Origin: Octopus sinensis
Lineage: Eukaryota
DNA: 64,000 bases
Reading direction: 5' to 3'
NCBI RefSeq assembly: GCF_006345805.1
Contig: NC_043001.1
Span: 39,370,001-39,434,000, forward strand
Shown: positions 2,925 to 51,527 of the stretch, one piece after another
Layout: every line of letters starts with the position of its first letter
Position numbering within the stretch: position 1 is the first letter of the stretch
The notes under the pieces: model-generated
Databases searched by the model: none
Seen by the model: only the letters and a program-made list of their open reading frames with translations
What the model was told of the DNA's origin: nothing
Translations under genes and position numbers: made by a program

Positions 2925-5870
2925 AGTTCTACAAGCTCAGAACTGGCACAGTCAATGTTGGCACTATGAAATGTAGGTTCGGAGAGATAGTTGAGATGCT
3001 TGAGCAGAGTCATGTAGATGTTTGCTGAGTCCAAGAGATACGATGGAAGGAGCCTCAGCTACACTGCTTACAAGCAAAAGGCATAGATACAAATTTTTCT
3101 GAGTAGACAACAATGAAGGCCTAGGTAGCATAGATATTCTACTAGCAGAGAAATCGGTGGATAAGGTGATTGATGTAGTTAGGGTTTGTGATAGGATTAT
3201 TAATCTAAGAATAGCCTTGTTTGATGTAGCTGTGTCAGTTATCTATGCATATGCTCCCCACACTAGATTCACAGATACTCAGAAGTACCACCTCTGTGAA
3301 TCTCTTCTGAGGACTAGCTCTTCTGAGGGTTACCTGGACAATGAAAGACACCAACATTTGCATCATGGCAAGGGACTTCAATGGACATGCTGGAAAATAG
3401 TCTGATGGATTTCAGGGTGTGCATGACAGCTATGGCATTGGCTCCAGAAATGAGGCGGGGACAAGGCTGCTGAAATTTTGTTATGCTCATGGCTCACTGG
3501 TTTGCAACACCAACTTCAGAAACCTGTCACTTGATCACTTATCAATTTGGAGGACATACCAACCAGACTGACTACATTCTCACCAGACTCAGGGATAGAT
3601 GCATACAAAATATTTCCCAGGGAAAGAATGTACAACTCAGCCTAAGTTAGTTGTTAGTGACTTCAGACTTACAACCAGAAAAATCCAGACGAGCCAATAT
3701 GGAAAAGGAGGTTGTGGAATCTCAAGGATCCTTCAAATGGACAGAGATTTAGAGATGTCCTCAAGGAGGCCTATGATGAGAAGGAGAGAGTGATAGAGGC
3801 ATATGACATAGAGGACAACTGGAAGTTCCTACAGGACAATCTACTAAGAGAAACAGACCAACAAATTTTTGATTGAAGCAAAGCCACTGCCAGACCAAGT
3901 GTGAACAATGATGTTGACTGGGTCGTAAAAGAGAAGAGACAGGTCTGGGAAGAGTGGAAAAGAGGGGTGTGGTAGTAAAGAATCATAGCAGAAGGCTAAA
4001 AGAGAGAGTAGAAGCAAAATAGAAGAGGTGTACCAGTGTCCTACAGTATGAAGATTAGAAACTTGAAGTGTTCCTGATTGCTAGACAGTATGTCTGTGAG
4101 AAAATGTAGGAGAGAAGTGCATGTAGATGGATAATGGTATGCTTACACTTAGTGGTATGGCCAAGAAAGAGTAATATGAAAAAGTTACTGTGAAATTTTG
4201 AATGTAGGTACTGAATGGGATAAAGGGAATCTTCCTTGGGTAAACCCAAAAGAGGGACTGGCTATCCTAGTAGACAGCAGTATGGTAGATAAAGCAATTA
4301 AAAACATGAACTCTGGGAAAGCCCCTGGTCCATCCAGAATCCCAGCTGATATGCTCAAAATATCCAGTAAGGTATGGGCTACTCCCATGCATAGTTAATC
4401 AGGTCATTCAGGAAGGTGTAATACCCAGTGATTGACATAGCAGCATAATTGTTGGTATGGGTAATGCTTTAAATAGAAGCAATTACAGAGGCATCAAACT
4501 CTTGGATCAGTTGAGAAGATTATGGAGAGAGTTATAGCCCAATTAATTAGGAGCAGAATGAGGCTAGATGAAATGTAATTTGACTTTGTCTGGGGAAGAA
4601 ACACTACTGACACTACTTTAATTGTCAGTAGCTAAAAATAAGCCATTATACTTGGCATTCATTGATCTAGAGAAACCCTTCAATGCAGCATGATGTGGTG
4701 GGGTCTGAGAAGGAGGCCAGGGATGGACTGGTGAAAGCTGTATGGGCCATGAACAAAGATAATGTCAATAAGATGAGAATTAACCAAGAGTACAGTGAAG
4801 AATTTGGCGTACAGGCAGGAGTTCATCATGGCTGAGTACTTAGTCCCCTCTTTCTCAATATTTTCTTCCAGGCCATAACAGAAGAATTCAAGACCAGCAG
4901 CTCTTGGGAACTACTATATGCTGATGATCTTACCCTCATAATAGGTTCCATATCAGAGCTAGATGAGAAAAACCAGCTGTGAAAGTAAATCCTGAAATCT
5001 AAGGTCATTAAAGTTAACTTAGCAAAAGCTAAGGTCTTAGTAAGCAAGAAATCTAACAAGACTCTACCTAACTCAGGTAAGTGGCCCTATTCGATTTGTA
5101 GGAAAGGTGTAGACAGTAACTCCATATAGTGTGCTCAGTGTTAGCTATAGATACACAAGAGGTGCAGTGGATTAATAGGAAGGTTATCAGAGAAGATAGT
5201 TTTCACATGTGATAGATGCACATAATCCATAAAAGCTCAGGAAATTGATTCTCTCAAATGCCCTGGTGGCTCATTAGAGGTAGCAGGTAATTTCTGCTAC
5301 CTAGAGGACCAAATTAGTAGTGGGGGAGAATGCACAGAGAATGTGATAGCTAGAATAAGAATAGAACAAGAGGAAATTCAGAGAGCTGTTACCTTTGTTG
5401 GCCACAAGTTTTCTCTCTCCAAGTAAAGGGAAGATTGTATGATGCATGTATACAGACAGGTAATTACACATGGTAGTGAGACATGGACCCTGAATGCAGG
5501 GGACATGCAAAGGTTAGAAAGGAATGAGGTTAGTATGCTCCATTGGATGTGCAATGTAAGTGTACATGTATGACAGAGTGCTAGTGTATTGAGAGAGAGA
5601 AGTTAGGAATAAGAGGAATTAGTTGCTGTGTGCAAGAGAGAAGACTGCACTGGTTTGGTCATGCTGCAGATGGATGCTGACAGCTCCATAAAGAAGTGCT
5701 GATCTTTCAAAGAAGATAGAATATGTGGAAGTGGAAAACCCAGGAAGACATGGGATGAAGCACTGATGAACAACCTCAGTATGCTGAACCTTTCAGGCAA
5801 GATGACAAAGGACCAAGATGCCTAGTGCCTTGCTGTACTCAAGAAGACCCATACTCCACAGCAGAAATGT
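2925..5870 (+). mobile_element. Near full-length degenerate RTE-clade LINE (APE endonuclease + RT)
   Basis: LRTGTVNVGTMK..VQEIRW at the start, VIYAYAP, KAPGPSRIPA, NYRGIKLLD, LLYADDL at ~4915 and HGSETW at ~5470; many stops and frameshifts. Confidence 0.9.
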
Positions 5871-6814: not shown

Positions 6815-8073
6815 TCAGGTCATCCTATAAGTTATGTCCGATTTTACCTTTTTTAAAATTGAATGAAATTTAATAGTATTTTAGAATGTTTAATGGAATT
6901 TTTTTTTATGCATTTAAACTAATCAAATATCATTTTACAGAATAATAGAAATGAAATTTCTTTGATTAAAACCCTTTCTAACATGGAAGTATCCAAAGAG
7001 CATTTGAGGCACATAATGCTTTATGAGTACAAAAAAGGAAAATCTGTAGCCGAAGTGACTTGAAACATACACTCAGTTTATGGGAAAGAATGCTTGAAAT
7101 AAAGAACTTGTAGAAGATGGTTTGCAAAATTCAGACGTGGAGATTTCAGCCTTGAAGATGAGGATCCAGTTGAGTTTGATAATAAGCTCCTTGAGGTATT
7201 ACTTGAAGAAAATCCTGCATTATCAGTTGAAGAATTGGCAATAAAGCTTAGTTCAAAACATACAACTGTTCATCATCATCTTCAACAACTTGGAAAAGTT
7301 CTAAAACTTGGAAAATGGGTGCCTCGTGAATTGTCCGAAAGCAACTGCAAATCCCAAGTCGACATCTGCTCTTCTCTCCATTCTCGCAAACTCATTTTAC
7401 CCTTTTTGGATAGACTTGTGACTAGTGACGAAAAATGGATCTTCTATCGAAATATTAAACGTCGTAAACAGTGGCTTGGTAAAAGGGAAAAGCTCAACCA
7501 CAACCAAGAAGGGAACTTCATAGGAAAAAGGTTCTTCTCTCTATATGGTGGGATTGCAAAGGAGTAATTCACTTTGAATTGTTACCACCTAATGCAACAA
7601 TCAATGTTCAAGTCTACTGTCAGCAATCAGAGCATTTGAACCAAGCTCTGAAGAAAAAAAGACCTGCTTTATTGAATTGAAAAGGAATAATGTTTCATCA
7701 GGATAATGTGCGACCCCACACTTCAAACATCACATCACAGAAGGCCAAAGAGCTTAGTTGGGAAAAAATTCCTCATCCATTTTATTCTCCCAACTTTGCT
7801 TCTTCAGACTACCATTTGTTTCATAGTTTACAGAATCATTTGGGGGACATAACTTTCGCAAGCCAGGAGGAGGTTGAAACTGACATTTCAGAGTTCTTTG
7901 CTTTGAAACCAAAAGAGTTTTACATTGATGGGATTAAAAAGCTTGTAAATAGATGAAAGAAAGTCATAGATAATCAGAGAAAGTACATTGATGATTAAAT
8001 TACAGTTAAATATAACAGTTGATCAGTTGTTTTCTTTATTCAAAATTCGGACAGAACTTATGGGATGACCTGA
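6815..8073 (+). mobile_element. mariner (DD34D) transposon, full length, defective
   Basis: ~30-bp TIRs TCAGGTCATCCTATAAGTTATGTCCGA and TCGGACAGAACTTATGGGATGACCTGA; length ~1.26 kb. Confidence 0.95.
6983..7998 (+). pseudogene. mariner transposase pseudogene
   Basis: MEVSKEHLRHIMLYEYKKG start; WVPREL, VTSDEKW, HQDNVRPH and YSPNFASSDYHLF motifs; in-frame stops and frameshifts. Confidence 0.92.
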
Positions 8074-8814
8074 TTTGTAAAATAGAGCAATATAGAGGAG
8101 AAATAATAAAATACTAAAATGAAAAACAAAATGCAACATCAAAGTTTCGTTTGTTCATGTTTTAGACATCTTCTATGTCTCTCAAATGCCTCAGAACATC
8201 CAAATAAAACATTTTAAGTTTATCTCTTAAGATTTTCTATAGAATTCAGAGTAGGGAACACTATGAATTTTTGAAAATATCTAAATGTTACTTCTACTGT
8301 ACTTTTTCTTGGAGAGCATACAAATAGAAAAAAATTGATACCTCATTTGTGAAATCTGGGCAAGTGAATTGATTGTAATCTTGCCTAATTGGCCTAAATG
8401 AATAATTAACTATATGTATAAGGTCATATCTTTGAAATTCAGGTGATAATCATCTTCAAATTTTGCAAATTATTAGTGTCCATGGAATAGCAGTTGCCTA
8501 TTTTTTCAGCTTCTTGAAAATAAAACCATATTTTTGGCAATTTTTAAAATATTTATGTAAAAACTATTTTGCTACTTGTAACAAACAGTCAATTTTGCAG
8601 TGTTTTCAGACCTAGCTAAATCCATAAGTACATGTCACAAGGACTTGAGTTTTGGCATATTTGTAGTAGATATAAATTAGATAAACCCTGAGATTTGAGA
8701 AATGATACCATTTCAATAAAATTCTAATGGACTATTAAAAATAGAAGAGTTTTGGATCAGGACATCCACATAATTTGAAATTAAAATTTGAATTTGTGTA
8801 TATTTTTTTCCTTA

Positions 8815-9265
8815 GGCGGGTGCCAGCAACGTCAACTTGGCTACAGCTATCCCGTCCAGTACAAGAGGAACTGCGGGATCAGAGCAACGGTTTGCGTGCG
8901 CGCTCGCTCGATAGAGCGGTAGCATCAGCCTTCCCTGAGCGATAATGGTTGAACACCTCTGAGCCGCAACTGCAGCCGGGTCCGAGTTGTTTTTCAAATG
9001 CATCTCAACCTCAAGGTGCATGCCTTAGCTCAGAGTTTACCGTCTGCACGTCACGTTTGTGCGACGAGAGGCAGCGTCGCCGGCGGGGATTGCCATTCTG
9101 CGAGTTTTGCGGCAGCAGCCTCACCGTCGTCGTCGTCGACGTCCCGTCCGACTTGTTCAAAGGGATCAAGACGAAAAGGATCGCTTGCATAAGACTTCGG
9201 AGTGACATGCTTAGTAGAGCAGCTACCACACTGCGATCTATTGAGTCGCTTCTTGCGAATGACAT
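8815..9265 (+). pseudogene. 28S rRNA 3'-terminal fragment (rDNA pseudogene)
   Basis: CAGTACAAGAGGAAC, GATAATGGTTGAACACCTCT and TAGTAGAGCAGCT..CTGCGATCTATTGA match conserved 28S 3' motifs (CAGTACGAGAGGAAC, GATTATGACTGAACGCCTCT, GCAGAGCAGC..GCTGCGATCTATTGA) in the correct order. Confidence 0.85.
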
Positions 9266-9269
9266 GATC

Positions 9270-10060
9270 CGACCTTTCGAGGCAGCCCCGCACGGAAACG
9301 AAGCAAACAAGTGTCACGGACAAGAAACGAAGGAGTTGGCGGTGGCTGCAGTGGGAGGAGCCGTCAGGGGCCCTGCCGGGTGCATGGCGGAGACGGAGAC
9401 GGAAGCGAACAAAGAGATGCATGAAGAAGACGAGCGAGAAAAAGAAAGGGAGCACCATATCGAGCGGCAACGGGGAACTAGCGCAGTAAAAGTAATTTGC
9501 TTGTGGCGGCGAGCCAGCAGCGCAGCGAAGGAAAATGACAAGAGATGGAGAAAAGGAGTGGCTGTCTACGCAACGCGACTGGCCTCTTGGTGTGGCGGCG
9601 ATGTTTGAGGACAGGCACCTTCGGCCGCGTCACTTCATACCGGCGACACGGCTTGCATTGCACAAGTGGGTGGCGATTCGTCTCAGCGAGTAAACGGCCG
9701 CAGTAAAGTCGAACAGCGTTAAGGAGAGAGAGAGATGAAAGCAAACTGTTATCTGTGCAAGAAATGCGGTCGTAGTTGATGCTACCGTCATGTCTCCTTC
9801 CGTCGAAGCCGCCGCGCTCACCCGTGTGCAAAGGTCGTCGCAATATCGACTGTGAGTGTGTGTCCGTGTGTTATGCGCCCCGAGTGATCGTTGTTGTTGT
9901 CGTCTTCTGCTGCGTAAGGAAGCCGCCACCGGCAACATCCGTGCTCGTGGTCGATGTCGCATGTGGAAATGTCGTCGTCGTCGTCATAAGTGGGTGGTAT
10001 CAAGCACGAGTCAGTGTATCCATGTACTATACGCTGGGATGAGGTGAGGGTAAACGGGGT
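9270..10060 (+). other. rDNA intergenic-spacer-like GC-rich sequence, copy 1
   Basis: Follows the 28S 3' end; 9866-10060 is a diverged paralogue of 11881-12075, which runs on towards the 18S. Confidence 0.6.
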
Positions 10061-10202
10061 CGACTTGGAACTTGTACGGACCGGTGGAATCTGACTGTCT
10101 AACTTAAATAGAATATCACGTAGCTGGCCAAGCCGCACAGACGCGACGAGATTTCTGCCCAGTGCTCTGAATGTCAAAGTAAAAAAATTCAACCAAGCGC
10201 GC
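10061..10202 (+). pseudogene. 28S rRNA fragment ending ~33 nt upstream of the R2 insertion site
   Basis: CGACTTGGAACT..GGAATCTGACTG..GATTTCTGCCCAGTGCTCTGAATGTCAAAGT..AAATTCAACCAAGCGCG matches the 28S segment before GGTAAACGGCGGGAGTAACTATGACTCTCTTAAGG. Confidence 0.92.
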
Positions 10203-11712
10203 GAAGTTGTAAACCGGAGTCTGCCACTGGTCAATGGCTTGACGCGGTAAGAGAGCTTACGTCTGTGGGTGGGACTATACTGGTAGATGAATCATGGTGG
10301 ATTGGCCCTCTCACTTTGGACAAGCTAAATATTTTCCATTTCACCCAAAGCTTTGTCACAGTTGTGGGAAGACCTTATAGAGATATTGGTGATTTTGATT
10401 AGGAGATGGGGGGCCTTCCCGTTAGGGCTAGGTAGGATACCGCTGGACTTACCGACACGAGTCCCATGTCAGCTAGTTAATAATCGGCCCTTCTAGATAG
10501 GCTGCGCTCTTTTGGCACAATACTGCAGTGGTTCCCAACTGACCAATGGCAAACTCTGGCTTACAACTTCTTGCAGCATAGTTGCGGGGGACTCTTTATT
10601 GTTTGGGGTTAGGGTCATTTGTTGGGCGATTCTTTGGCTGTACAGGTGGTTCTTTGACAGGAACCGGTGGACAGCAATCGGGCCCGGTGATTAACCGCAG
10701 CTTGTTCCATGGGGTGTAGCTAGTTTGGTTGGAGAGATTTTAGGTGGTAGTTTGGCGATATCTCTACCTTCTTTGGTGTGGTGGATCCCATGCTGCTCTT
10801 TAGGTTATTCTTCAATTGGTAATCCCTGTCTCTCGAGGAAATTGCTGTGCAATAACATGAATAATAACGTAAAGCAGATAAACATATGGCAGCCAGGCGC
10901 CGATAAACCGGTGGACTATGGGTAAGGGACAGGGCCTGCAGATCAGGCCCTGCATGTGGCTCATCTATGTCGGGCCAACTGGGGTGGATAACGGATTATA
11001 TCCACCCCGCGGTACGAATTGTGATACCACTTTGGTTAGGACTGACAATGTCGGTGGTCGAGTGATGCGCTCGACACTGACATATTCACGATGTAGACCA
11101 GACAAGTTCGTGCTAGATTGAATATGCTCTTATGATTCCCTGCACATGTGATGAATATGCTCTTATGATTCCCTGCACATCGAACTCTATACTCTGTTCG
11201 CTATGTCCTTGATTCTTCTCTTCTCCTCGACGATGGGGGGAACATGTGGAGTATACACATGGCATAAAGCCGGTATACAAGTGCGAGAAATGCGATAGGG
11301 AGAGCAAGCATCCCCACTCTATGAGATGCCACGCTAGTAAATGTAGTGGTGCGTTGGTTTCTAATGCATCCAACTCTGTTCAGCTTCCCTTCCAGTGCGA
11401 TCACTGTAGCTGTTCTTTTTTGACGGCTGTTGGTAGGTTGCTGCACGTACGCCACCGGCATCCTATCACAGCTAATACATGCAGGATCACACGGTACAAG
11501 GAAAACTTGTCCTTAGCAGTCCTGAGAATTGGTAGTCGTTGATATGACCGTTCTTTTCGAGAACGCTCTAGAGAAAGTATGCAAGTACCAGTCGCTCATT
11601 TCTCTTCTGATGGAAGAGTTTGATCGGCCAGTGGAGGTGTACGATCTCCCTGTTGGTGCCTGATGCGCGTCTGCGAGCAAAGCACTGGACGCATTAGAGA
11701 AAATTGACTGTT
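10203..11712 (+). mobile_element. R2 non-LTR retrotransposon remnant with three N-terminal zinc fingers (R2-A type), internally deleted
   Basis: Abuts the 28S target. One frame (11195-11465) gives CSLCP*FFSSPRRWGEHVEYTH, CEKCDRESKHPHSMRCHASKC and CDHCSCSFLTAVGRLLHVRHRHP (CCHH, CCHC, CCHH). Another frame (11526-11663) gives ELVVVDMTVLFENALEKVCKYQSL..VGA*, resembling the RLE nuclease C-terminus. Myb and RT are absent. Confidence 0.8.
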
Positions 11713-11880
11713 AAAATATTTGAATTTTTGGCAATTGCCTTTTCTGAACAACCCTAGTACATGATTCAGTATAGAGACAAATTATATAAATTAAAAAATT
11801 TATTTAACAATCTTGTTATTAAAATAATTTATTCAAAAATGGACTCTAAAAAGTGATACTACAAAAAATTAAGCAAAAAA

Positions 11881-12989
11881 TGTGTTATGCGCCCTGAGTG
11901 GTCGTCGTTGTCCTCGTCGTTGTCGCCATAGTCTTCTGCCGCAACGCGGCAAAGCCGCCACCGACTGCACGCGGTGCGCACGGTCGATATTGCGTGTGGA
12001 AAGGTCATCGCTGTCGTCAGTGGGCGGTATTGAGCAAGAGTGTGTGTGCGCTGGGACGAGGTGCGATTAAACGGGGTGAACGCGATCGCGATGATGCTGC
12101 CAGCCTAGTGGGTGTTGCCGGCCGCACTCGAGGGTGTGGTCGATACCGCAACTCGGTGCATCCGGCAAATGCCAAGAAGTCGACAGGGACAAGCCACGAT
12201 TTTGGTGACTGTAGCTCTCCAAGGGAATCCACACTACTATAGCGGGTACGAGCCTGTCGGCGGTCACCGCCTCCTACAAACATCCGCGCTCGTCATCGAC
12301 CGATAGCTTGCGTCCCGGTTCACGTGCACGCGAACAGGCTCCGTCTCCGGTCTGCTTTCCTTCCACAGCCGCCGACCGCAGTTGGCGGAGGCTGCCTTCA
12401 CACGTCTGTGATTGTTATCAGCCGATAGTTCGCCTTCCTCTGCTCTCTTGTGTCCGTCCCGGTCCGCCCTTACTCGACTGTGCTCCGTCTCCGGCGCGCC
12501 TTCCTTCCACGGCCGTCTCCGCCACCTTCCGACCACTCCTCGACGCTCTGCTGACGATGCCCGGCGGCAGGCGTTATATCCTCCTGCATGAACGTCCGCG
12601 TCTGCGTGGACGCGACCACGGCCGATTCTGCTAGCCTGGCGTCAGCTGCTGGCCGAAAGGTGACGCCGTAGTCGATACTGCAACATGGTCGGTCCGGTAA
12701 ACGTCGAGAAACCAGCGGCGGAAATCCACACTCTAGGTGGCCGTCGCACCCCGAGGGAGTCCGGACAATTATAAGGAGTACGAACCGGTCGACTAAGTTT
12801 CTGTTACGCTATGGACCGCGCTTGGCGGAGGCCGCCCAGCGCCCAGCGGATACTGCAGCCTACATGCATCTGACCTCGTCGTCGGTAGATAGCTCGCCTT
12901 CTTCCGCTCACTCGTGCACGTCCCGGGACCGATTGCACGCCTTCTCCAGCGCGCCTTACATCCGCGACCGTCTCCGCCACCTTCCGCAT
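11881..12989 (+). other. rDNA spacer/5' ETS-like GC-rich sequence, copy 2 (may include an unrecognisable 18S 5' end)
   Basis: GC- and CpG-rich; starts with the paralogue of 9866-10060 and leads into recognisable 18S. Confidence 0.6.
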
Positions 12990-15064
12990 TGGTCGCGACA
13001 CAAATATTAGACTGAAACCGATGTGTATGGGCTGTCGCAGCAGCCACCGCGTTCTGCATGCGGGTCGCAGCGTTCGGCGGCTTCACGTCCTTTGATTTTG
13101 GTAACTCTGGATAACTGTATGTACGATCGCACGGGCCAGTATCGAGTAGCTTTCGCGCAACGGGTTCCTCCTATCAAATGTGACGGCTCGGTAAGTGCCG
13201 ACTGTCGTGGAAACAGGTAACGGGGAATCAGGTTTCAATTCCGGAAAGGGAGCATGTGAAACAGCTACCACATCCAAAGAAGGTAGCAGTCGTGCAAAAT
13301 ACATACACCCAGCACAGGGAGTAGTGACGAAAAATAATGTCGCGGCGCTCTGTCGAGGTCCCGGGATCAGAATGTGTGCACTTCAAAGCCGTTAACGAGG
13401 CTCAACTAGAGGCAAGTCTGGTGCCAACAGTTTTAGTAATTCCAGCTCCGGTAGCGTATGTTAAAATTGTTGCCTTTGAAAAAAAGTTCATAGTCGGAAT
13501 TCGGGTCTCGAAAATGTGCCCTAGCACATTCGGGGCGACGGCGCTGTTGCGGGCACACCTTGCGCGCATCCTCTTCGGTCATCCGTTCGCACGCCCGGCC
13601 CTAATCACCAGTGCATGCGCGGTCGGCCCACGGAGTTCTGTGTGCATCACCGACGCGTCGGCAACCTGCTCTGTCTTCGCCTGTCCAGTTTTACACTCCG
13701 GCGGCGTCGCGTGGGCTGGTGCAGGGACCATGAGACAGGCATTGTTGTTCACGTTGCGGTAGCGCGTCCACCTCCCGGTCGTTTCGCCCCCGCACAGTAC
13801 CTCCGAGGGTGCTTTTTGCAGAGTGTCGGAGGCAGCCAATACGTTCACTGTGAAAAACTTAGAGTGCTCAAAGCGAGCCCTGCCAGCTTGCATACGAAAA
13901 GCATGGTATGATGGAAAATGGCCTCGCCCGCGCATCAGCCGACGGTCTCTGTTCACGACGAGGTGATGATCGAAGGGAGCGATTGGGGCCACTTGTATTG
14001 CGACGTTAGAGGTGAAATTCTTGGATCGTTACAAGACGCACTGCAGCGAAAGCGTGTGACAAGCACATTTTCCTCGATCAAGAGCAAAAGTCGGAGGTTC
14101 GAAGACAATCAGATACCGTCGTAGTTCCGACCGAAAACGATGCCGACTGGCGCTCCACCGACATTCCTTTCGGCGACGTGGCGGAGTGCTTGCGCGGAAA
14201 ACCATAGTCGGTTCCGGGGGAAATATAGCTGCAAAACAGAAACTTAAAGGAACTGACGGAAAGACACCATCTGGAGTGGAGCTTGCGGCTTATTTTGACT
14301 CAACAAGGCAAAAATCCCTAGGTCCGGACACCGGTAGGATTGACAGATCGATAGCTCTTAGTTGGTGGAGCGATCTGTCTGGTTGATTCTGATAATGAAC
14401 AAGATTCCGGCCTGCTAACTAGCGCGTCTATTAGTGCTTTTCCAGCAGCGTGGTGGCACCGAAGCCGTCCTCGGTAGCTCCACGCGCGGCCTGCACATGC
14501 TGTTGCTGCTGCTCTCCTTCGCATACGTCGCTGCGGATGCACCCGTCACCTTTCGCGGGTCGGTTGCAGTGTGATTGTGGCGTCAGTTGCGGAGTGGCGG
14601 CGGTGACTCGGTCGGCTCGACCCGCGGGATTCGGCGACGGCACGCCATCAAGTCCGGGCCAGTTGGCTGGTGAACGCAGCTCTTCTTAGAGAGACGGGTG
14701 GTAGAAAGCTGCACGAGGAGGAGAGATAAAAGGTCTGCGATGCCCTTACTTGTCCAGGGCTGTACGCGCTATACTGGAAGTATCAGAGGGCGCGTCTCCC
14801 TCCGGCGCAAGAGGGTCGGGAAACCTCTGAACCACCTTCAGCGATAGGGATCGGGGACTAGGACCAACTCTGTGAACAAGGAATTCCCAGTAGGCGCGGG
14901 TCACCAGCCCACGTGATCATTCCCTGCCCTTTGTAAGCACCGCCCATCGCTACTACTGATCGAACGGTCCAGTGAGGTCCTCGTTCTCTGATGGACCGAA
15001 GAAGATAACCGAACCTGATTGCTTAGACGAAGTAGAAGTCGTAACAAGGTTTCCGTAAGTGAAC
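12990..15064 (+). pseudogene. 18S rRNA pseudogene with long GC-rich expansion segments
   Basis: Collinear 18S motifs: GGGGAATCAGG, GTAGTGACGAAAAATAA, GGCAAGTCTGGTGCC, AAACTTAAAGGAA, TTAGTTGGTGGAGCG, GTCGTAACAAGGTTTCCGTA. Universal sites are damaged: 530 loop reads GTGCCAACAGTTTTAGTAA, a ~35-nt deletion lies at ~14357, and the 3' end stops at GTGAAC. Confidence 0.95.
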
Positions 15065-15649
15065 AGGCAAGTTCAAGACAAGTACAGAACAAGAAAATTT
15101 TTACTTAAAATATTGCAGCTAAGGATAAAATTTGAATATTAAAAGTTATTTGATTTTAATTTACAAAGTAACATTATAATTAAAAAAAGGTACAATCATT
15201 TTGTTAAAATATTGATACACTGGAATATTAAAAAAAATGAGAGCCAGAAGTACCAATGTAGCTAAAGTTTTATGCAAAGTTGAATAGTATATATGGTAGG
15301 CAAATTCATTGTAAAAATTTAGGCATTGGGTCAAGACTAAAACTGTGAAGACTTGGCAATAACTCAAGCAAATTTTACTGTGAATTTGTTGTTATAGGTA
15401 GATTTTATCGTAGTATATAACTAATTTTTGTATTAATTTTATTTATTGTACTAATTATGTACTACTATTATTTTTTTATAACCGTTTTTCAAATTTCTAA
15501 TTATTAATTAATAATTAAAAAATGGATTTTTTTTTTAAATGCAAAAAATATTTTGGGTTATTTTTTACTTTTAATAGAAGTAATAACTTGTCCTGAGCTT
15601 TTCTAGGTTTATAATCTTAAGAATAGTATACATATACTTTTACATTTTT

Positions 15650-16025
15650 AAAATTTACTTTCACATGTTTCGGTCATTTGGGCTGTGGCTATGCAGGAGC
15701 ACTGCCTTTTAGTCAAAGAAGTCAACCCCTGGACTTCTTGTTTGAAGCCTACTACTTATTTTATTGGTCACTTTTGCCGAACCATTAAGTTACAGGGATG
15801 TAAACACACCAAAATAGTTGTTAAGCGATGGTGGAGGGACAAACACAAATGAATATCTATACATATATATGAGAGGCTTCTTTCAGTTTCCATCAATAAA
15901 ATCCACTCAAGAGGCTTTAGTTGACTCAAAGCTATAGTAGAAGACACTTGCTCAAGGTGACATGCAGTGGAACTGAACCTGGAACGATATGGTTGGGAAG
16001 CAAGCTTCTTACCACTCAGCCATGC
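15650..16025 (-). mobile_element. tRNA-headed SINE (octopus-type), head and tail
   Basis: Tail GGAGCACTGCCTTT..AAGAAGTCAACCCC and head GAAGACACTTGCTCAAGG..CTTACCACTCAGCC match the other copies. Confidence 0.8.
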
Positions 16026-16027
16026 TT

Positions 16028-16260
<233 letters not shown>

Positions 16261-16814: not shown

Positions 16815-19500
16815 CAGGGAGTGACGACCCTGCCTGACACGAGTTCCGGGCTCAGCTGGCTCCGGCTGACAGCACCCGGTATGGGCCCCTATCCAGGGTT
16901 ACGGAAAGGAGACAACCTTCAAAGAAATCCGGAGTGGAGCCCCGAAGGCGGTCTAGTGTTCGACTCGACACTCTTCCGGCAGCTCCTGCAACCAAGCTGG
17001 TGCCAAACGTAATGCTCTGCACTCCTTTGGACTACATCAGCAAGGTCGAGAGAGGAAACCTGACGATTGGGCTACCCAGGACTTTCTTATCTATAGCCCA
17101 GGCCTGCGCAAAACTGGAGAGGACACTTCAGTGCTGCTGTAAAAAGCTGCAGAAACAACACGGGAAGTAACAGTCACGAGTGATAAGTCCATTCAGATTG
17201 GCGTAAAATATGGGCGCTACGGGTTACCTCTGACGGTGAGAGGGACCTCCGTGTCCTATTGGTTAGCTACTGCCCACCTCAAGCTGGGCAGCCCCCAGTT
17301 AATAAGGTGCTGACCCGCCACAGGCCGCCTGCTTCATTGGGTGCTTGGAGCTAAGAGTATGACTTGAAAAGCGGCCTGCAACCTCTGCACCAGGCAAACA
17401 ACTAAAAGTCAAGAAAACACCAGTCCTGCGGTTGGCAAGCTGGAATGTCAGGACCATGTGCCCTGGAATATCTGATGATCTACTCAGGGTTGAAGACACA
17501 AGGAAAACGGCCATCATTGACCGTGAACTAAAGAAGCTCAACATAGGCATTGCTGGGCTACAGGAGACAAGACTTCCCTCAAACAGCAAACTCAAAGAGC
17601 AGGATTTCACCTTCTTTTGGCAGGGAAGCGATCCAGAAGAACCTCGTCAACATGGCGTTGGCTTTGCAGTGAGAAACTCACTACTCTCCTCAATAGAACC
17701 ACCATCAGGAGGGACTGAGCGTATCCTCTCACTGCGCCTCTCGACTTCTTCTGGCTCAGTACATCTACTCAGCATCTATGCCGGCAAAAACACCATCCTG
17801 CTTCAGCACCTTCATGAGCTTCTGTGTCAGTGCTGGGAAGAGGGTACAGTCCCTCAGGATATGCGGGATGCTAACATCATTACGCTTTACAAAAACAAAG
17901 GTGACCGTGGTGATTGTAACAGTTACCGTGGAATATCTCTTCTAAGCACTGTTGGAAAGACCTTTGCCCGCGTTATCCTGGCCAGGCTACAACTACTTGC
18001 TTCTCGAATCTATCCGGAATCGCAGTGTGGCTTTAGAAGAAGCAGATCAACTATCGATATGATATTCTCCATACGCCAACTTCAGGAGAAGTCCAGAGAG
18101 CAGAAAATGCCATTATATATGGCCTTCATTGATCTAACAAAGGCCTTTGACTCGGTAAGCAGAACAGGCCTCTTCACCCTGCTCCAAAAAATCGGATGTC
18201 CACCAAAGCTGCTAAGGATCATCAAGTCTTTCCATGATGACATGCAAGGCACCATACAGCACAACGGTTCAACATCAGCCGCCTTCCAAATAAAAAATGG
18301 GGTAAAGCAAGGTTGTGTCCTCGCTTCTACATTGTTTGGCATCTTCTTCTCGCTCTTACTCTCACATGCCTTTCAGACATCAGATGATGGAGTGTTTCTG
18401 CACAGTAGAAGTGACGGGAAACTGTTCAATCTCTCGCACCTGCGTGCCAAGACCAAAATCAGAAACGTCCTGATCAAGGAGATGCTATTTGCTGATGATG
18501 CCGCTCTGGTATCACACACAGAGGAAGCCCTCCAAAGGCTCATTAACTGTTTTGAGCAAGCATGTAACGACTTTGGCTTAGCTATCAGCCTTAAGAAGAC
18601 CAACATCATGGGTCAGGCTACATCGGACATCCCAAACATACATATTGGAGACCACAGATTACAAGAGGTGGAGAAATTTACCTATCTGGGCTCTACCGTC
18701 ACCTACAACCTATCCCTTGACGCTGAGCTCAATATACGCATTGGCAAGGCAGCTGCTGCGATGACCCAACTCTCCAAACGGGCTTGGGACAACAATAAGC
18801 TGACCAAGACCACGAAAATGAAGATCTACCAGGCATGTGTACTTTGCACTCTACTGTATGGAAGTGAGACTTGGATGCTCACACGCCAAGAGCATCGCCT
18901 AAACATCTTTCACCTGCGCTGCCTCCGAAAAATCCTTGGCATCAAATGGCAGAACCATATCCCCAACAAAGATGTTCTCAGGCAAGCAGGAATACCAAGC
19001 ATGTTTGCACTCCTCACACAAAGACGTATGAGATGGTTTGGGCATGTTAGCCGTATGAAAGATGGAAGAATCCCCGAGGACATACTCTACGGGGAGCTTG
19101 CTAGGGGTACTAGGTCTGTGGGTAGACCGTTCTTACGTTACAAGGATGTTTGCAAAAGGGACATGAAGGCTTGCAACATCAATATTAGCGGTTGGGAGGC
19201 AGTTGCCGGCAACCGTGAAGACTGGCGACGTACTGTAAAAAGAGGGAATACAAAGGAGTGACAGAGAGAGAGAGAGGAGAAATGGAAAAACAAGAAAAGA
19301 CGTCAACAAGAAACTATGGCATTACAACCAGCCAGGAACAGTCTTCGCTACATTTGCAGTACCTGCCAGAGGGAGTGTTTGTCCAGGATAGGACTACACA
19401 GCCACAGCAGGAAATGTATCAGGACATGAAATGTAAAAGCCGGACTAGACTACTTTATGCGCAACTCCATTGTCTCCCGAGACAAAAAGGATGCCAACAA
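16815..19500 (+). mobile_element. Young RTE/BovB-like LINE with ~600-bp 5' UTR, in-frame internal deletion and intact 3' end
   Basis: GC-rich relative to flanks; 3' end CCATTGTCTCCCGAGACAAAAAGGATGCCAACAA is typical of RTE elements; 5' boundary approximate; no TSD found. Confidence 0.9.
17432..19261 (+). CDS. 609-aa RTE ORF: N-terminal half of APE endonuclease fused in frame to a complete RT domain
   Basis: ASWNVRT, GLQETRL and LSIYA are joined at ~17782 directly to GKNTILLQHLHELL..YRGISLLS..QCGFR..FIDLTKAFD..GVKQG..LFADD..YLGS..YGSETW. After TGA at 19259-19261 the same frame continues to the C-terminal zinc finger CSTCQRECLSRIGLHSHSRKC (stop 19427-19429). Confidence 0.85.
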   Translation: MASWNVRTMCPGISDDLLRVEDTRKTAIIDRELKKLNIGIAGLQETRLPSNSKLKEQDFTFFWQGSDPEEPRQHGVGFAVRNSLLSSIEPPSGGTERILSLRLSTSSGSVHLLSIYAGKNTILLQHLHELLCQCWEEGTVPQDMRDANIITLYKNKGDRGDCNSYRGISLLSTVGKTFARVILARLQLLASRIYPESQCGFRRSRSTIDMIFSIRQLQEKSREQKMPLYMAFIDLTKAFDSVSRTGLFTLLQKIGCPPKLLRIIKSFHDDMQGTIQHNGSTSAAFQIKNGVKQGCVLASTLFGIFFSLLLSHAFQTSDDGVFLHSRSDGKLFNLSHLRAKTKIRNVLIKEMLFADDAALVSHTEEALQRLINCFEQACNDFGLAISLKKTNIMGQATSDIPNIHIGDHRLQEVEKFTYLGSTVTYNLSLDAELNIRIGKAAAAMTQLSKRAWDNNKLTKTTKMKIYQACVLCTLLYGSETWMLTRQEHRLNIFHLRCLRKILGIKWQNHIPNKDVLRQAGIPSMFALLTQRRMRWFGHVSRMKDGRIPEDILYGELARGTRSVGRPFLRYKDVCKRDMKACNINISGWEAVAGNREDWRRTVKRGNTKE

Positions 19501-21077: not shown

Positions 21078-21555
21078 ATGTCACCCACTCCCACTTCGTC
21101 TGTTGTTTTACTCACCTTTCCTGCAAGCCGAACTGACAGGCTATGGCATTTATCATATGTAAGATATATGCATGCCCACTCATATTTTATTATGTCGCTT
21201 TTTATGTGTGTGTTATGTGGGGGCAAATGCTTGAGTCATGCAGCCCTGGTCAGACATCAGGGAACTCACAGGAATCAACCCACTGTAAATTGTGATTCGG
21301 CTATTGTTCAGAACAGAACATGTGCAATCTGTGGAAATGTGTACCTTCCAGGTGGAGGATTGGAAACACATGTCAAAAGAATTCATACTGTGACACCTGT
21401 TTCTTCTGCCAGCCAGCATTGCTGTGCATTATGCAATAGAATGTGCAAGTCTTTGACTGGGCTCAAGAGTCATACAAGGGCCTCACATTGCACCATCAAT
21501 AATTCATTTCATTATTATTTCTACCAATGGTTTTGCTTGTCTACAAGAAAGAAGC

Positions 21556-21619
<64 letters not shown>

Positions 21620-21686
21620 ATGCATATATTTCATGTGTGTATGCTTATATAAGTTACAATGCTTTTTTTGTGAGTCAGTTAAATAG
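21078..21686 (+). CDS. Open frame with three C2H2 zinc fingers, most likely a LINE C-terminal remnant
   Basis: CVLCGGKCLSHAALVRHQGTH, CAICGNVYLPGGGLETHVKRIH and CALCNRMCKSLTGLKSHTRASH; long non-TGEKP linkers; the last resembles the RTE terminal GLxSH finger; frame runs into (TG)n. Confidence 0.45.
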
Positions 21687-32085: not shown

Positions 32086-32681
32086 TAGAAGACTCTTGCC
32101 CAAGGTGCCACACAGTGGGACTGAACCGAAACCATGTGGTTGAGAATCAAACTTCTTACCATACAGCTATGCCTGCACCTTATGAGCCATTTATATTTTT
32201 GAAACATTTTTCTATTGATACATCTATACTTATGTAACAAATAACAAGCACAAAATTTAAAAGTGTGCATATGTATAAGTGTTAAATAATGATTTTGTTT
32301 GAATACTTTCCATTTAAAATTAAAAGCTTATCTCATTTGTAAAATGGTACTATGCTTCAGGAAATGAGCTGGCAAGTGGGATGTAATATGATAGATTGTC
32401 ACTTAGTTTTTCTATTCCACTTCACATGCTTATATTGAAGCATCCTGGTATTACAAGACATCAGACACATTTAGATCCAAAAGTACTGACTCTTTTACTC
32501 TTTTACTTGTTTCAGTCATTTGTCTGTGGCCATGCTGGAGCACTGCCTTTAGTCGAAGAAATCAACCCCAGGACGTATTCTTTGTAAGCCTAGTACTTAT
32601 TCTATTGATCTCTTTTGCTGAATTGCTAAGTTACGGGGGACATTAACACACCAGCATCGGTTGTCAAGCAATGTTGGGGGA

Positions 32682-32726
<45 letters not shown>

Positions 32727-33084
32727 GCACATATATACAACGGGCTTCTTTCAGCTTCTGTCTACCAGATCCACTCACAAGGCTTTGGTCGGCCTGAGGC
32801 TATAGTTGAAGACACTTGCCCAAGTTGCCACGCAGTAGGACTGAACTCAGAACCACATGCCTATGTTATAAACAAAATTTAACAATTTTATACTTAAAAG
32901 TTGATAATGTATACTCTTTTACTTGTTTCAGCCATTTGACTGCAGCCATGCTGGAGCACTGCCCCAGGACTTATTCTTTGTAAGACTAGTACTTATTCTA
33001 TCAGTCTCTTTTGCCAAACCGCTAAGTTATGGGGACATAAACACACCAGCATGGTAGTCAAGCAATGTTGGGGGGACAAACACA

Positions 33085-33123
<39 letters not shown>

Positions 33124-33129
33124 CACACA

Positions 33130-33184
<55 letters not shown>

Positions 33185-33860
33185 CATATACATGACGGGC
33201 TTCTTTCAGTTTCCATCTAACAAATCCACTCACAAGGCTTTGGTCAGATCGAGGCTACAATAGAAGACTCTTGCCCAAGGTGCCACACAGTGGGACTGAA
33301 CCGAGAACCATGTGGTTGAGAATCAAACTTCTTACCATACAGCTATGCCTGCACCTTATGAGCCATTTATATTTTTGAAACATTTTTCTTTTGATACATC
33401 TATACTTATGTAACAAATAACAAGCACAAAATTTAAAAGTGTGCATATGTGTAAGTGTTAAATAATGATTTTGTTTGAATACTTTCCATTTAAAATTAAA
33501 AGCTTATCTCATTTGTAAAATGGTACTTTGCTTCAGGAAATGAGCTGGCAAGTGGGATGTAATATGATAGATTGTCACTTAGTTTTTCTATTCCACTTCA
33601 CATGCTTATATTGAAGCATCCTGGTATTACAAGACATCAGACGCATTTAGATCCAAAAGTACTGATTCTTTTACTCTTTTACTTGTTTCAGTCATTTGTC
33701 TGTGGCCATGCTGGAGCACTGCCTTTAGTCGAAGAAATCAACCCCAGGACGTATTCTTTGTAAGCCTAGTACTTATTCTATTGATCCCTTTTGCTGAACT
33801 GCTAAGTTACAGGGGACATTAACACACCAGCATCGGTTGTCAAGCAATGTTGGGGGACAA

Positions 33861-33892
<32 letters not shown>

Positions 33893-34274
33893 GCACATAT
33901 ATACAACGGGCTTCTTTCAGCTTCTGTCTACCAGATCCACTCACAAGGCTTTGGTCGGCCCGAGGCTGTAGTTGAAGACACTTGCCCAAGTTGCCACACA
34001 GTAGGACTGAACTCAGAACCACATGCCTATGTTATAAACAAAATTTAACAATTTTATACTTAAAAGTTGATAATGTATACTCTTTTACTTGTTTCAGCCA
34101 TTTGACTGCAGCCATGCTGGAGCACTGCCCCAGGACTTATTCTTTGTAAGACTAGTACTTATTCTATCAGTCTCTTTTGCCAAACCGCTAAGTTATGGGG
34201 ACATAAACACACCAGCATGGTAGTCAAGCAATGTTGGGGGGACAAACACAGACACACAGACACACAGACACACA

Positions 34275-34360
<86 letters not shown>

Positions 34361-34478
34361 CATATACATGACGGGCTTCTTTCAGTTTCCATCTAACAAA
34401 TCCACTCACAAGGCTTTGGTCAGATCGAGGCTACAATAGAAGACTCTTGCCCAAGGTGCCACACAGTGGGACTGAACC
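32086..34478 (+). repeat. Direct tandem duplication, period 1176 bp, bounded by SINE heads
   Basis: Paired ORFs 32396/33572 and 33233/34409 are offset by 1176; about a dozen substitutions plus microsatellite length changes. Confidence 0.95.
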
Positions 34479-35472
34479 CAGAACCATGTGGTTGGTAAGC
34501 AAGCTACTTACCACACAGCCACTCCTGTACGTTTGTTTTTGTTTTGTTTTTCTCTTTAAATATTTCATCTGATGCATCTTCAAATTTAGTCTATTTGATT
34601 TTATATGAACCAACCTGTAAGAATTGTTAGAGTAACTGTTTTCAAAGTTAGATACCCTTCCTGATGTTAAAGTTTCAACTAATGACAGCATATTATAGGG
34701 ACATAGTAGCTTAGTGGTAAGGGGTGAATAAGGTTACCAAATCAATACAACAAACAAGTATATCAATCACTCAAACACTGAATGCTTAATAATTGAGAAA
34801 GTAAATTGATTTGTCCATAGATAAATGAATATATATAAATAACTTAAACAACTCATGTGCATGTCTGATTTAGGACATCGTGGATGTTCTTAGCAGTGAA
34901 ACATGAGGTTAATCCCAAAACTAGCAAATTGTCTTTAGTATATATGTTCAAATTTATTGTTACTGAGGCTGTGACAATTGTTAAAAAAACATGAAACCAT
35001 ATACTTTATAATGGTTTCGATTAATCAACACACATCACTCTACTTATACTCTCAATCAATTTTCTAATTCTTATCTAAACATTGTTGAAATACGATATTC
35101 TGTTAATAGTTGTCATAATGACTAAAACCAAAAAAAAAATTGGTCTTTCAAATAATCTACATGTACAAACATCCTGTACATTATATATGAAATTCAGTAT
35201 CAAAATATCTATCTTCTATGGTTACTAAATCATCTTAGGAAGGAGAATTGAGAGGTTTCATTTGTCTTTTTGATGATGTGTCTAAAAGCTAAAGTTTTGG
35301 GAGAGAAAATGTAATAACAAAAAGCAACTATTTTGAAACTATCATCTACAACATTTCTAAGATTATTTCATTGAAACAATAGCAGGAAATGAGAAATTAA
35401 AAAAAAAATTCACTGTCATAATAATAGCATCACGATAAAGTTGCTGTGGATATGTTTGTGTGCTTGCCTCTG

Positions 35473-51294: not shown

Positions 51295-51336
51295 TGCATT
51301 TAATATATATGTATGATTTTACATATATATGTACGT

Positions 51337-51393
<57 letters not shown>

Positions 51394-51527
51394 TATATAT
51401 ATATATCTATATATGCATATATATATATATATATATGTATGTGCATATGTATATATGTATGCATATATATATATGCATAATATATATATATATATATATA
51501 TATACACATGCATACATATATTTATGT

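What the first reader, a model, noticed from the sequence alone, without database searches (positions are those of the whole stretch)
8815..15064. Isolated rDNA fossil compressing parts of up to three tandem units into ~6 kb
The order is 28S 3' end, spacer, a jump at 10060/10061 into 28S just upstream of the R2 site, the R2 remnant, ~170 bp of AT-rich filler, a second spacer copy and an 18S pseudogene. The two spacer copies agree up to AAACGGGGT (10052-10060 and ~12070-12078) and then diverge, which places a deletion of ETS, 18S, 5.8S and most of 28S at that point. All pieces share one orientation and sit in AT-rich repeat debris. Inference: a rearranged piece of an rDNA array was relocated, possibly via extrachromosomal rDNA, and preserves an older spacer and expanded 18S sequence.
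Basis: partly seen in the sequence, partly recalled or inferred. Interest (0 to 1): 0.75.

Follow-up and report, generated by a model that had tools for sequence, protein, structure and literature searches.

The report
Decayed octopus rDNA fragment carrying R2
This is an old, dead piece of an octopus-type ribosomal DNA array (end of 28S, spacer, mutated 18S) with a broken R2 jumping gene lodged in the spacer: an ordinary kind of genomic fossil, although the same R2-in-spacer layout recurs at younger loci in Octopus vulgaris.

Summary
Window 8809-15068 is one same-strand, GC-rich block in AT-rich repeat DNA. It contains the last 462 nt of 28S, spacer, 171 nt of 28S from just upstream of the R2 site, an R2 remnant, a second copy of a ~195-nt spacer segment, more spacer, and a disabled 18S. 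The rRNA parts differ from younger Octopus vulgaris rDNA fragments by K2P 0.16-0.21, with GC-to-AT bias, so the block is an old real locus and not an assembly chimera.

The three-unit, two-deletion reading is not required. R2 therefore keeps both ends (with about 3 kb deleted internally) and abuts spacer copy 2, with no downstream 28S.

The simplest reading is one 28S-spacer-18S junction, with an R2 that still carries a 28S leader sitting inside the spacer between two copies of a spacer segment. Three younger O. vulgaris loci show the same spacer / short 28S / R2 module. How the block reached this site cannot be tested here. Ordinary class; moderate interest.

The parts
8809..9270 (+). 3'-terminal 462 nt of 28S rRNA (sarcin-ricin loop region through D12 to the 3' end), pseudogene
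   Evidence: Rfam LSU match 8834-9270, 60.6 bits, model 3007-3399. 82% identical to O. vulgaris L005 28S, K2P 0.21. Left edge placed by alignment.
9271..9866 (+). Intergenic spacer directly 3' of 28S (first part)
   Evidence: Contiguous with the 28S 3' end. Weak collinear matches to the O. vulgaris spacer: GATGAAAGCAAACTGTTA and 9855-9874 = L006 8621-8640 at 18/19.
9867..10060 (+). Spacer segment, copy 1 (about 195 nt), ending in AAACGGGGT
   Evidence: Pairs with 11881-12077 (E 2.7e-15; z 39.6). Not ES27. Its left edge is continuous with the upstream spacer, as shown by a match to L006 that spans 9866/9867.
10061..10231 (+). 28S 'leader': 28S core from the first bases 3' of ES27 to about 19 nt upstream of the R2 insertion site (about -176 to -20)
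   Evidence: 87.5% identical to O. vulgaris 28S (L004 8350-8493), E 2e-45. Weak Rfam LSU match 10167-10201. Alignment. AACGG..T is shared by the spacer end and by 28S at the junction.
10232..11129 (+). R2 5' UTR, lacking about the first 190-215 nt of the full-length element
   Evidence: Alignment to full-length O. vulgaris R2 5' ends resumes at TTGACGCGGTAAGAGAGCTTACG. 10880-10949 matches the R2 5' UTR.
11130..11512 (+). R2 ORF N-terminus with three zinc fingers (11195-11260, carrying an in-frame stop at 11210-11212; 11282-11344; 11396-11461)
   Evidence: Matches solved R2 proteins 9nl3/9dou at E 6e-8. tblastn of R2-like proteins maps to 11129-11545. Finger coordinates.
11513..11696 (+). C-terminal end of the R2 ORF (restriction-like endonuclease region, stop at 11661-11663) and the first bases of the 3' UTR; about 3 kb (Myb, RT, most of the endonuclease) is deleted just upstream
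   Evidence: Local alignment to L005 30940-31150 gives z 19.5, 0 of 500 shuffles. Six full-length R2-like proteins match 11526-11660 at their own C-terminal residues.
11697..11880 (+).
   Evidence: Continuous with the ORF end. Young R2 3' UTRs are AT-rich with A-rich ends. Sequence similarity is not significant overall (z 0.7-0.8). The last 30 nt resemble the L006 R2 terminus only weakly (79 of 2000 shuffles).
11881..12077 (+). Spacer segment, copy 2, starting directly after the AT-rich stretch
   Evidence: 12024-12068 matches the O. vulgaris spacer that lies just upstream of the 28S piece in L005 (z 4.9-5.2).
12078..12986 (+). Remaining spacer and external transcribed spacer, built of two copies of a ~430-nt sub-repeat (12101-12532 and 12632-12986), each with a TATA(G/A)(C/G)G(G/A)GTACGA motif
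   Evidence: Sub-repeat alignment z 35.8 and blastn. Not 28S-like. Runs directly into 18S.
12987..15068 (+). 18S rRNA pseudogene: near full length, 5' ~300 positions compressed, V4 and V7 expanded, internal deletions, stops about 17 nt before the 18S 3' end
   Evidence: Rfam SSU matches. The 3' part is 86% identical to the L005 18S fragment, K2P 0.16. Right edge.

Best explanation
The block is a dead fragment of an octopod rDNA array. It holds the natural junction between two neighbouring units: the last 462 nt of 28S, about 1.7 kb of sub-repeated intergenic/external spacer, and the next unit's 18S. It does nothing now; the mechanism to explain is how it formed.

Inside the spacer sits one R2 retrotransposon copy. 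That copy is still fused to 171 nt of the 28S that lies upstream of the R2 target site, and it is bracketed by two copies of a ~195-nt spacer segment.

Shown: the identity, order and edges of all pieces; the presence of both ends of R2; the absence of 28S downstream of the R2 site; and roughly equal decay of the rRNA pieces.

Inferred:
1. The R2 and its 28S leader entered the spacer as a unit. The most likely route is reverse transcription of a 28S/R2 co-transcript. This R2 copy lacks its first ~200 nt, the region where R2 elements carry their self-cleaving ribozyme, so the RNA could not be cut free of the 28S.
2. The 5' junction formed at a short homology (AACGG..T). The spacer segment was either duplicated as a long target-site duplication, or the two copies were already neighbouring sub-repeats.
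3. This spacer/28S-leader/R2 module existed in living rDNA-derived repeats, because shortened versions occur at three younger O. vulgaris loci.
4. The fragment then became separated from any active array, lost about 3 kb of R2 and parts of the 18S by deletion, and decayed by about 16-21% with a GC-to-AT bias.
For: Piece identities.

R2 keeps both ends. The 5' UTR and zinc fingers are shown. The ORF C-terminus at 11513-11696 gives z 19.5 against young O. vulgaris R2 and matches six R2-like proteins at their C-termini. The AT-rich stretch that follows occupies the place of the R2 3' UTR. No TAGCCAAATG occurs anywhere in the window, so copy 2 of the spacer follows R2 directly.

The 195-nt copies are spacer: there is no ES27 similarity, and there are collinear matches to sequence downstream of 28S in L005 and L006.

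Microhomology at the junction: the spacer reads ..TTAAACGGGGT(G) and octopod 28S reads ..GCGAACGGT|CGACT.

The same module occurs at O. vulgaris L004, L005 and L006 on three chromosomes, with 28S pieces of about -87..-5 and -56..-5. The L005/L006 junction (GTGCGATT|TCTGCC) equals the window junction minus about 100 nt lying between two GATT.

Precedent: R1 copies outside the rDNA carry 7-28 bp of upstream 28S, and R2 copies outside 28S exist in several Drosophila species (PMC2718515). [quoted passage not shown]

Uniform decay argues for an old, real locus. K2P is 0.21, 0.21 and 0.16 for the three rRNA pieces, 42-49% of reference CpGs are lost, and C>T/G>A changes dominate.
Against: - The AT-rich 11697-11880 cannot be shown by sequence to be R2 3' UTR (z 0.7-0.8). 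Support for a true R2 3' terminus at 11880 is weak (p about 0.04 in one of three tests), and the conserved GTGGGACC..CCCAC hairpin of young R2 3' ends is missing.
- A 195-nt target duplication is unusual. The two copies differ by K2P 0.28, so their original identity cannot be checked.
- No ribozyme was detected in young R2 5' ends, so the ribozyme-loss step rests on what is known of R2 in other animals.
- No functional octopod IGS could be obtained, so 'spacer' is defined only by position and by comparison with other non-functional loci.
- Young loci carry a 28S(+37..+109) piece after R2 or within the spacer, which the window lacks. This could mean that R2 inserted normally into a small 28S fragment already sitting in the spacer.
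Confidence: 0.55

Rival explanations
1. Three successive rDNA units were compressed by two large deletions: one from the spacer of unit 1 to the 28S of unit 2 just upstream of an R2 insertion, and one from R2 through the 28S 3' part and early spacer to the spacer of unit 2, continuing into the 18S of unit 3.
For: The order and orientation fit. The overlap of the two spacer copies follows automatically from two breakpoints 195 nt apart. The window's R2 3' UTR-like stretch is only about 185 nt, against about 430 nt in young copies, and lacks their terminal hairpin, which is what a breakpoint inside the UTR would give. Microhomology at 10060/10061 also suits deletion by end joining.
Against: It needs two deletions, of at least 8 kb and at least 2 kb, plus the internal R2 deletion, where one insertion suffices. 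It must place one breakpoint within or at the end of the R2 3' UTR by chance. The same spacer region is joined to short 28S pieces upstream of R2 at three other loci, which points to an inherited or recurrent module and not to a private accident of this fossil.
Confidence: 0.28
2. R2 inserted by its normal site-specific route into a small ectopic copy of the 28S target region that already lay among spacer sub-repeats. The downstream half of that mini-target was later deleted in this fossil.
For: Young O. vulgaris loci have both a 28S piece upstream of R2 and a 28S(+37..+109) piece, with a shared derived change, after R2 or embedded in the spacer. The spacer is built of related sub-repeats.
Against: The window has no trace of 28S downstream of the site. 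The window's 28S leader is the ordinary gene variant, not the diverged spacer-embedded variant seen in L005. The origin of the mini-target would itself need explaining.
Confidence: 0.1
3. The 195-nt repeat is the 28S D8/ES27 expansion segment, so 9867-10231 is one continuous stretch of 28S.
For: 28S core homology begins exactly where the repeat ends. The ends of the repeat can pair (GCGCCCCG / CGGGGT). AAACGGGGT resembles 28S GAACGGT.
Against: There is no similarity to the 570-nt ES27 of O. vulgaris (z -0.6 and 1.0). No 28S sequence lies upstream of either copy. Copy 1 is continuous with spacer sequence found downstream of the 28S 3' end in L006/L005. Copy 2 is followed by spacer leading to 18S.
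Confidence: 0.03
4. Assembly chimera built from reads of the functional rDNA array.
For: rDNA is often misassembled, and no read data were available here.
Against: All rRNA pieces are 16-21% diverged from younger copies with the same GC-to-AT bias. The 18S has disabling changes and deletions. R2 is 48-52% diverged from young R2. Such sequences cannot come from the homogeneous active array.
Confidence: 0.02

Closest known systems
rDNA fragments and rRNA pseudogenes outside active arrays ('orphons')
   Same: Partial, mutated 18S/28S and spacer lie outside any tandem array, in repeat-rich DNA, and decay neutrally.
   Different: Here the fragment is the inter-unit junction (28S end, spacer, 18S) and carries an R2 inside the spacer. 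That this class is widespread in animals is stated from general knowledge, not tested here.
R2 site-specific non-LTR retrotransposon (three-zinc-finger branch)
   Same: The N-terminal zinc fingers and C-terminal endonuclease end are homologous to R2 proteins. The element is directly preceded by the 28S that lies upstream of the R2 site.
   Different: The 3' side abuts spacer, not 28S. The RT is deleted. The 28S ends about 19 nt short of the canonical site, and the element lacks about 200 nt at its 5' end.
R1/R2 copies outside the rDNA in Drosophila (Stage and Eickbush 2009, PMC2718515)
   Same: Elements at non-28S sites carry upstream 28S sequence attributed to co-transcripts. Microhomologies and upstream deletions occur at the 5' junctions of truncated R2 copies.
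   Different: The 28S tags reported there are 7-28 bp and belong to R1. Here the leader is 171 nt, belongs to R2, and the site is the rDNA spacer itself.
R9 of bdelloid rotifers (Gladyshev and Arkhipova 2009, cited in PMC7650587)
   Same: [quoted passage not shown]
   Different: R9 inserts in 28S. Its duplication length (about 126 bp) is recalled from memory. Whether the 195-nt copies here are a target duplication at all is unproven.
O. vulgaris composite loci L004, L005, L006 (OX597822.1, OX597831.1, OX597820.1)
   Same: They show the same order: 28S 3' part, spacer, short 28S piece from upstream of the R2 site, then R2. Spacer motifs are homologous.
   Different: They are much younger: the 28S 3' part scores 609 bits and the R2 copies are 90-97% alike. 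Their 28S pieces are shorter. They contain head-to-tail R2 copies and an extra 28S(+37..+109) piece. None continues through the spacer into an 18S.

Membership tests
rRNA pseudogene / rDNA fragment outside an array | Significant homology to 18S and 28S rRNA models | tested here: met
   Rfam SSU up to 500.7 bits and LSU 60.6 bits; blastn to O. vulgaris rDNA pieces.
rRNA pseudogene / rDNA fragment outside an array | Disabling changes at conserved positions, or truncation | tested here: met
   The 530-loop is mutated, there are internal deletions, and the 5' ~300 positions are compressed. Only 462 nt of the 28S 3' end and 171 nt of mid-28S are present. K2P is 0.16-0.21 against younger copies.
rRNA pseudogene / rDNA fragment outside an array | Not part of a tandem rDNA array | tested here: met
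   No other rRNA match in the 64 kb window. Flanks are AT-rich repeats and a LINE. Anything beyond the window is unknown.
R2 retrotransposon | N-terminal zinc-finger DNA-binding region homologous to R2 proteins | tested here: met
   E 6e-8 to solved R2 proteins. The long library hits have a central RT, no AP endonuclease, and match R2Tg at 1e-164.
R2 retrotransposon | Reverse transcriptase domain | tested here: not met
   No RT homology inside the block; the R2-like proteins hit RT only in the unrelated LINE at 17.6-18.9 kb. The RT has been deleted from this copy.
R2 retrotransposon | C-terminal restriction-like endonuclease region | tested here: met
   Only its last ~50 residues remain: z 19.5 to young R2, and matches at the C-terminal positions of six R2-like proteins.
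R2 retrotransposon | Insertion at the canonical 28S site (..TTAAGG|TAGCC..), with 28S on both sides | tested here: not met
   On the 5' side, 28S is present but ends about 19 nt short of the site. On the 3' side there is no TAGCCAAATG in the window; spacer follows instead.
28S expansion segment D8/ES27 (for the 195-nt repeat) | Alignable to the lineage's ES27 and flanked upstream by the 28S core | tested here: not met
   z -0.6 and 1.0 against O. vulgaris ES27. No 28S lies upstream of either copy.
Retrotransposon insertion with target-site duplication | Direct repeats abut both ends of the insert, and the insert ends at the element's true 3' terminus | tested here: inconclusive
   The repeats abut the insert at 10060/10061 and 11880/11881. 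The true 3' terminus is only weakly supported, and the spacer also contains related sub-repeats.

The most novel reading that the evidence does not exclude
In octopods, R2 has held a long-lived niche in the rDNA spacer. A module of spacer segment, 28S leader and R2, formed before this fossil died, has been propagated and renewed up to the recent past at several O. vulgaris loci. An R2 in that position, a few hundred bases downstream of the 28S 3' end, could be transcribed by polymerase I read-through without destroying a 28S gene. The window would preserve the oldest and only complete example, running from 28S to 18S.
Probability: 0.2. Interest if true: 0.6.

Novelty: new member of a known kind. 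Interest (0 to 1): 0.35.

Why it matters
The fossil is an ordinary rDNA/R2 pseudogene, and it should be masked so that it is not mistaken for a cephalopod 18S or 28S paralogue.

Its value is as a record. It is the only locus seen here that runs uninterrupted from a 28S end through the spacer into an 18S, so it gives a dated picture of an ancestral octopod spacer and of the expanded 18S.

It also shows an R2 that was carried into the spacer together with its upstream 28S, and related younger modules sit on three O. vulgaris chromosomes. If the spacer proves to be a regular home for R2 in octopods, that would bear on how R2 persists without inactivating rRNA genes.

Tried and rejected
1. ES27/D8 identity of the 195-nt repeat. 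I suspected this because 28S core homology starts exactly at 10061 and the repeat's ends can pair. Rejected: no similarity to O. vulgaris ES27.
2. Copy 2's downstream sequence as a decayed 28S piece, which I thought I saw by eye. Rejected: z 0.1.
3. The middle of the repeat as a decayed 28S(+37..+109) piece, as in L005. Rejected: z 0.5 and -1.8.
4. Word-indexed protein search with the R2 zinc-finger fragment. No hits; the full HMMER search was needed.
5. Fetching functional cephalopod 28S through the minus-strand ORF 9818-10234. This returned only three generic eukaryote 28S ORFs.
6. Fetching a living octopod IGS through an ORF of the L005 spacer. No hits.
7. Naming the source species through window ORFs. 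Nothing was on record. The organism is therefore inferred only as an octopod, from the best R2 matches (Argonauta hians, O. vulgaris) and from shared repeats.
8. Looking for an HDV-like ribozyme in young R2 5' ends with Rfam. None found.
9. Sequence proof that 11697-11880 is R2 3' UTR. Not significant.
10. The octopus 28S H88 break motif from a 2026 preprint. It lies outside the 28S part kept in the fossil, and the exact motif is absent from L005, so it is not relevant.
11. No target-site duplication or shared element was seen at the outer edges 8809 and 15068.

Full report
OBSERVATION. The window is AT-rich (GC about 0.25-0.40) except for a block at about 8.8-15.1 kb with GC 0.47-0.61.

Rfam finds eukaryotic SSU rRNA at 13170-15131 in collinear pieces covering model positions 311-1831. 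It finds LSU rRNA at 8834-9270 (model 3007-3399, 60.6 bits) and weakly at 10167-10201. All matches are on the + strand, and there are none elsewhere in the 64 kb.

A self-comparison confirms two copies of a ~195-nt segment, 9867-10060 and 11881-12077 (E 2.7e-15; z 39.6). Both end in AAACGGGGT, after which they diverge.

The zinc-finger ORF at 11130-11512 matches solved R2 proteins (E 6e-8). It also matches 100 proteins in the representative library. The long ones among these have a central RT, lack an AP endonuclease, and match R2Tg at 1e-164.

SOURCE ORGANISM AND COMPARATORS. The best R2 matches are encoded in Argonauta hians (GCA_054771915.1) and Octopus vulgaris (GCA_951406725.2). The window shares interspersed repeats with O. 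vulgaris at 75-92% identity. The window is therefore from an octopod; I could not name the species.

Three O. vulgaris loci fetched through R2 fragments proved decisive comparators: L004, L005 and L006, on three chromosomes. They hold much younger rDNA pieces and R2 copies:
- 28S from model 1496 through ES27 to the R2 site (L004 7306-8521).
- A 1.4-kb 28S 3' part scoring 609 bits, followed by spacer (L005 31682-33765).
- An 18S 3' end running into ITS1 (L005 18593-19560).
- Full-length 5.25-kb R2 copies with normal R2|TAGCCAAATGCC junctions.

IS THE REPEAT SPACER OR D8/ES27? It deserved care, because 28S core homology begins exactly at 10061 (CGACTTGGAACTTGTACGGACC, the first core bases 3' of ES27) and the ends of the repeat can pair.

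The 570-nt ES27 of O. vulgaris shows no similarity to either copy (z -0.6 and 1.0). Instead, short collinear matches tie the repeat to sequence that follows the 28S 3' end in the young loci:
- Window 9855-9874 equals L006 8621-8640 (18 of 19). This match spans the left edge of copy 1, so that edge is not a breakpoint.
- Window 12024-12068 matches L005 33631-33686 (z 4.9-5.2), which is the spacer just upstream of L005's own 28S piece.

What follows copy 2 is not 28S-like (z 0.1). It consists of two ~430-nt sub-repeats (z 35.8) that run into the 18S. The repeat is therefore spacer.

The resemblance of AAACGGGGT to 28S GAACGGT|CGACT is best read as a microhomology at the junction.

Window 11513-11696 is homologous to the C-terminal end of the R2 ORF and the start of its 3' UTR. 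It gives z 19.5 against L005 30940-31150, and six full-length R2-like proteins match it at their own C-terminal residues.

The R2 remnant therefore comprises:
- A 5' UTR that lacks the first ~190-215 nt.
- Three zinc fingers, one carrying an in-frame stop.
- An internal deletion of about 3 kb at about 11513.
- The ORF end.

That stretch sits where the R2 3' UTR belongs, and young R2 3' UTRs are AT-rich with A-rich ends. However, the sequence similarity is not significant (z 0.7-0.8), and the 3'-terminal resemblance to L006 is weak (79 of 2000 shuffles).

No 28S downstream of the R2 site exists anywhere in the window. Spacer copy 2 starts directly at 11881.

REINTERPRETATION. The order is: 28S end, spacer (ending in copy 1), 28S leader plus R2, spacer (starting with copy 2), external spacer, 18S. 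This is simply one natural inter-unit junction with a single insert in the spacer, bracketed by a direct repeat.

The insert looks like a reverse-transcribed 28S/R2 co-transcript:
- The 28S leader (-176 to about -20) is contiguous with a 5'-truncated R2.
- A copy lacking its 5' ~200 nt would, by analogy with R2 elsewhere (PMC3774820, listed), lack the self-cleaving ribozyme. That step is inference, and Rfam found no ribozyme in young copies.

The literature gives precedents:
- Drosophila R1 copies outside the rDNA carry 7-28 bp of upstream 28S.
- 5'-truncated R2 junctions show microhomology and upstream deletions.
- R2 copies outside 28S exist in several species (PMC2718515).

The two spacer copies could be such a duplication. 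They could also be neighbouring sub-repeats, since the spacer is built of related motifs. The data do not decide between these.

It needs more events, and it needs a breakpoint in or at the end of the R2 3' UTR.

THE JUNCTION IS NOT PRIVATE TO THIS FOSSIL. L005 and L006 join the same spacer motif to 28S at about -87 (..GTGCGATT|TCTGCC..). L004 joins the spacer to 28S at about -56.

The L005/L006 form equals the window form minus about 100 nt lying between two GATT. The L004 form equals the L005 form minus the stretch between two GAAG. This is my reading, and it is inference.

Either one ancient spacer/28S-leader/R2 module was propagated and trimmed, or this spacer region is a recurrent entry point. 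In both cases the jump at 10060/10061 probably predates the death of this fragment and was not caused by a relocation.

The young loci also carry a 28S(+37..+109) piece after R2 or within the spacer. The window lacks this piece, which keeps alive a rival reading: R2 inserted normally into a small 28S fragment already resident in the spacer.

AGE AND REALITY. Against the young O. vulgaris pieces, the fossil's 28S 3' part, 28S leader and 18S 3' part differ by K2P 0.21, 0.21 and 0.16. C>T and G>A changes are the commonest, and 42-49% of reference CpGs are lost.

The two spacer copies differ by K2P 0.28. That is about what two sequences that were identical near the time of death would show. R2 differs from young R2 by about 0.5.

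The even decay of the rRNA pieces and the disabling changes in the 18S rule out a chimera of active-array reads. I give no absolute age, because no octopod neutral rate was available.

The outer edges (8809, 15068) show no duplication or recognisable element. How the fragment came to lie here is therefore open: transfer, or the last remnant of a lost array.

VERDICT. The object is an ordinary rDNA/R2 pseudogene. It has one instructive feature, an R2 carried into the spacer together with its 28S leader, and that feature is shared with younger octopus loci.

Noticed in passing
L005 (O. vulgaris OX597831.1:79799823-79846370, reversed) 19573-44409: A cluster of at least five near-full-length R2 copies (5.25 kb, 90-97% alike), some head to tail. 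The junction at 39020-39090 repeats CTCTCTTGTGGGGCCTGTTTC three times. The copies are mixed with a 28S 3' part, spacer, and an 18S 3' end plus ITS1 fused to an internal R2 piece. It is not a functional rDNA unit.
   Followed up: partly
L004 12560-12625; L005 33795-33815: The young R2 5' UTR carries two or three copies of GGATGCATTAACAGG. Rfam's LSU model aligns this motif to the 28S just 3' of the R2 site, so it may mimic the target.
   Followed up: no
L005 33519-33623; L006 8435-8558; L004 14371-14425: A 28S(+37..+109) piece with a shared derived change (GGATCAAAGGCGAG) is embedded in spacer sequence or follows a truncated R2 3' end. Its origin is unexplained.
   Followed up: partly
L008 (Logan SRR11869390 contig) 3995-4312: Another decayed 28S fragment (ES27 3' part plus core up to about 30 nt before the R2 site) lies on the same contig as an R2 zinc-finger ORF (1010-1687), in an unidentified sample. 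This suggests such composites are common in the lineage.
   Followed up: partly
window 17432-19261: An uninterrupted 609-aa ORF with a reverse-transcriptase domain (Pfam RVT_1, 2e-34) from a LINE unrelated to R2. It is 91% identical over 460 nt to a copy in O. vulgaris L004.
   Followed up: partly
window 21078-21686: A 202-aa ORF with three C2H2-like zinc fingers running into a (TG)n tract. It has no Pfam family and no match to the R2-like proteins.
   Followed up: no
window 6954-8073; 15658-16131; 32489-34526; 51057-51450: Interspersed repeats shared with O. vulgaris loci at 75-87% identity. One is a ~1.1-kb element just left of the fossil; the other is a ~350-470-bp element present in several copies.
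   Followed up: no
window 12230-12245 and 12768-12783: Each ~430-nt spacer sub-repeat contains TATAGCGGGTACGAG or TATAAGGAGTACGAA. This may be a duplicated polymerase I promoter-like motif. The second lies only about 220 nt before the 18S, which would make the external spacer very short or partly deleted.
   Followed up: no
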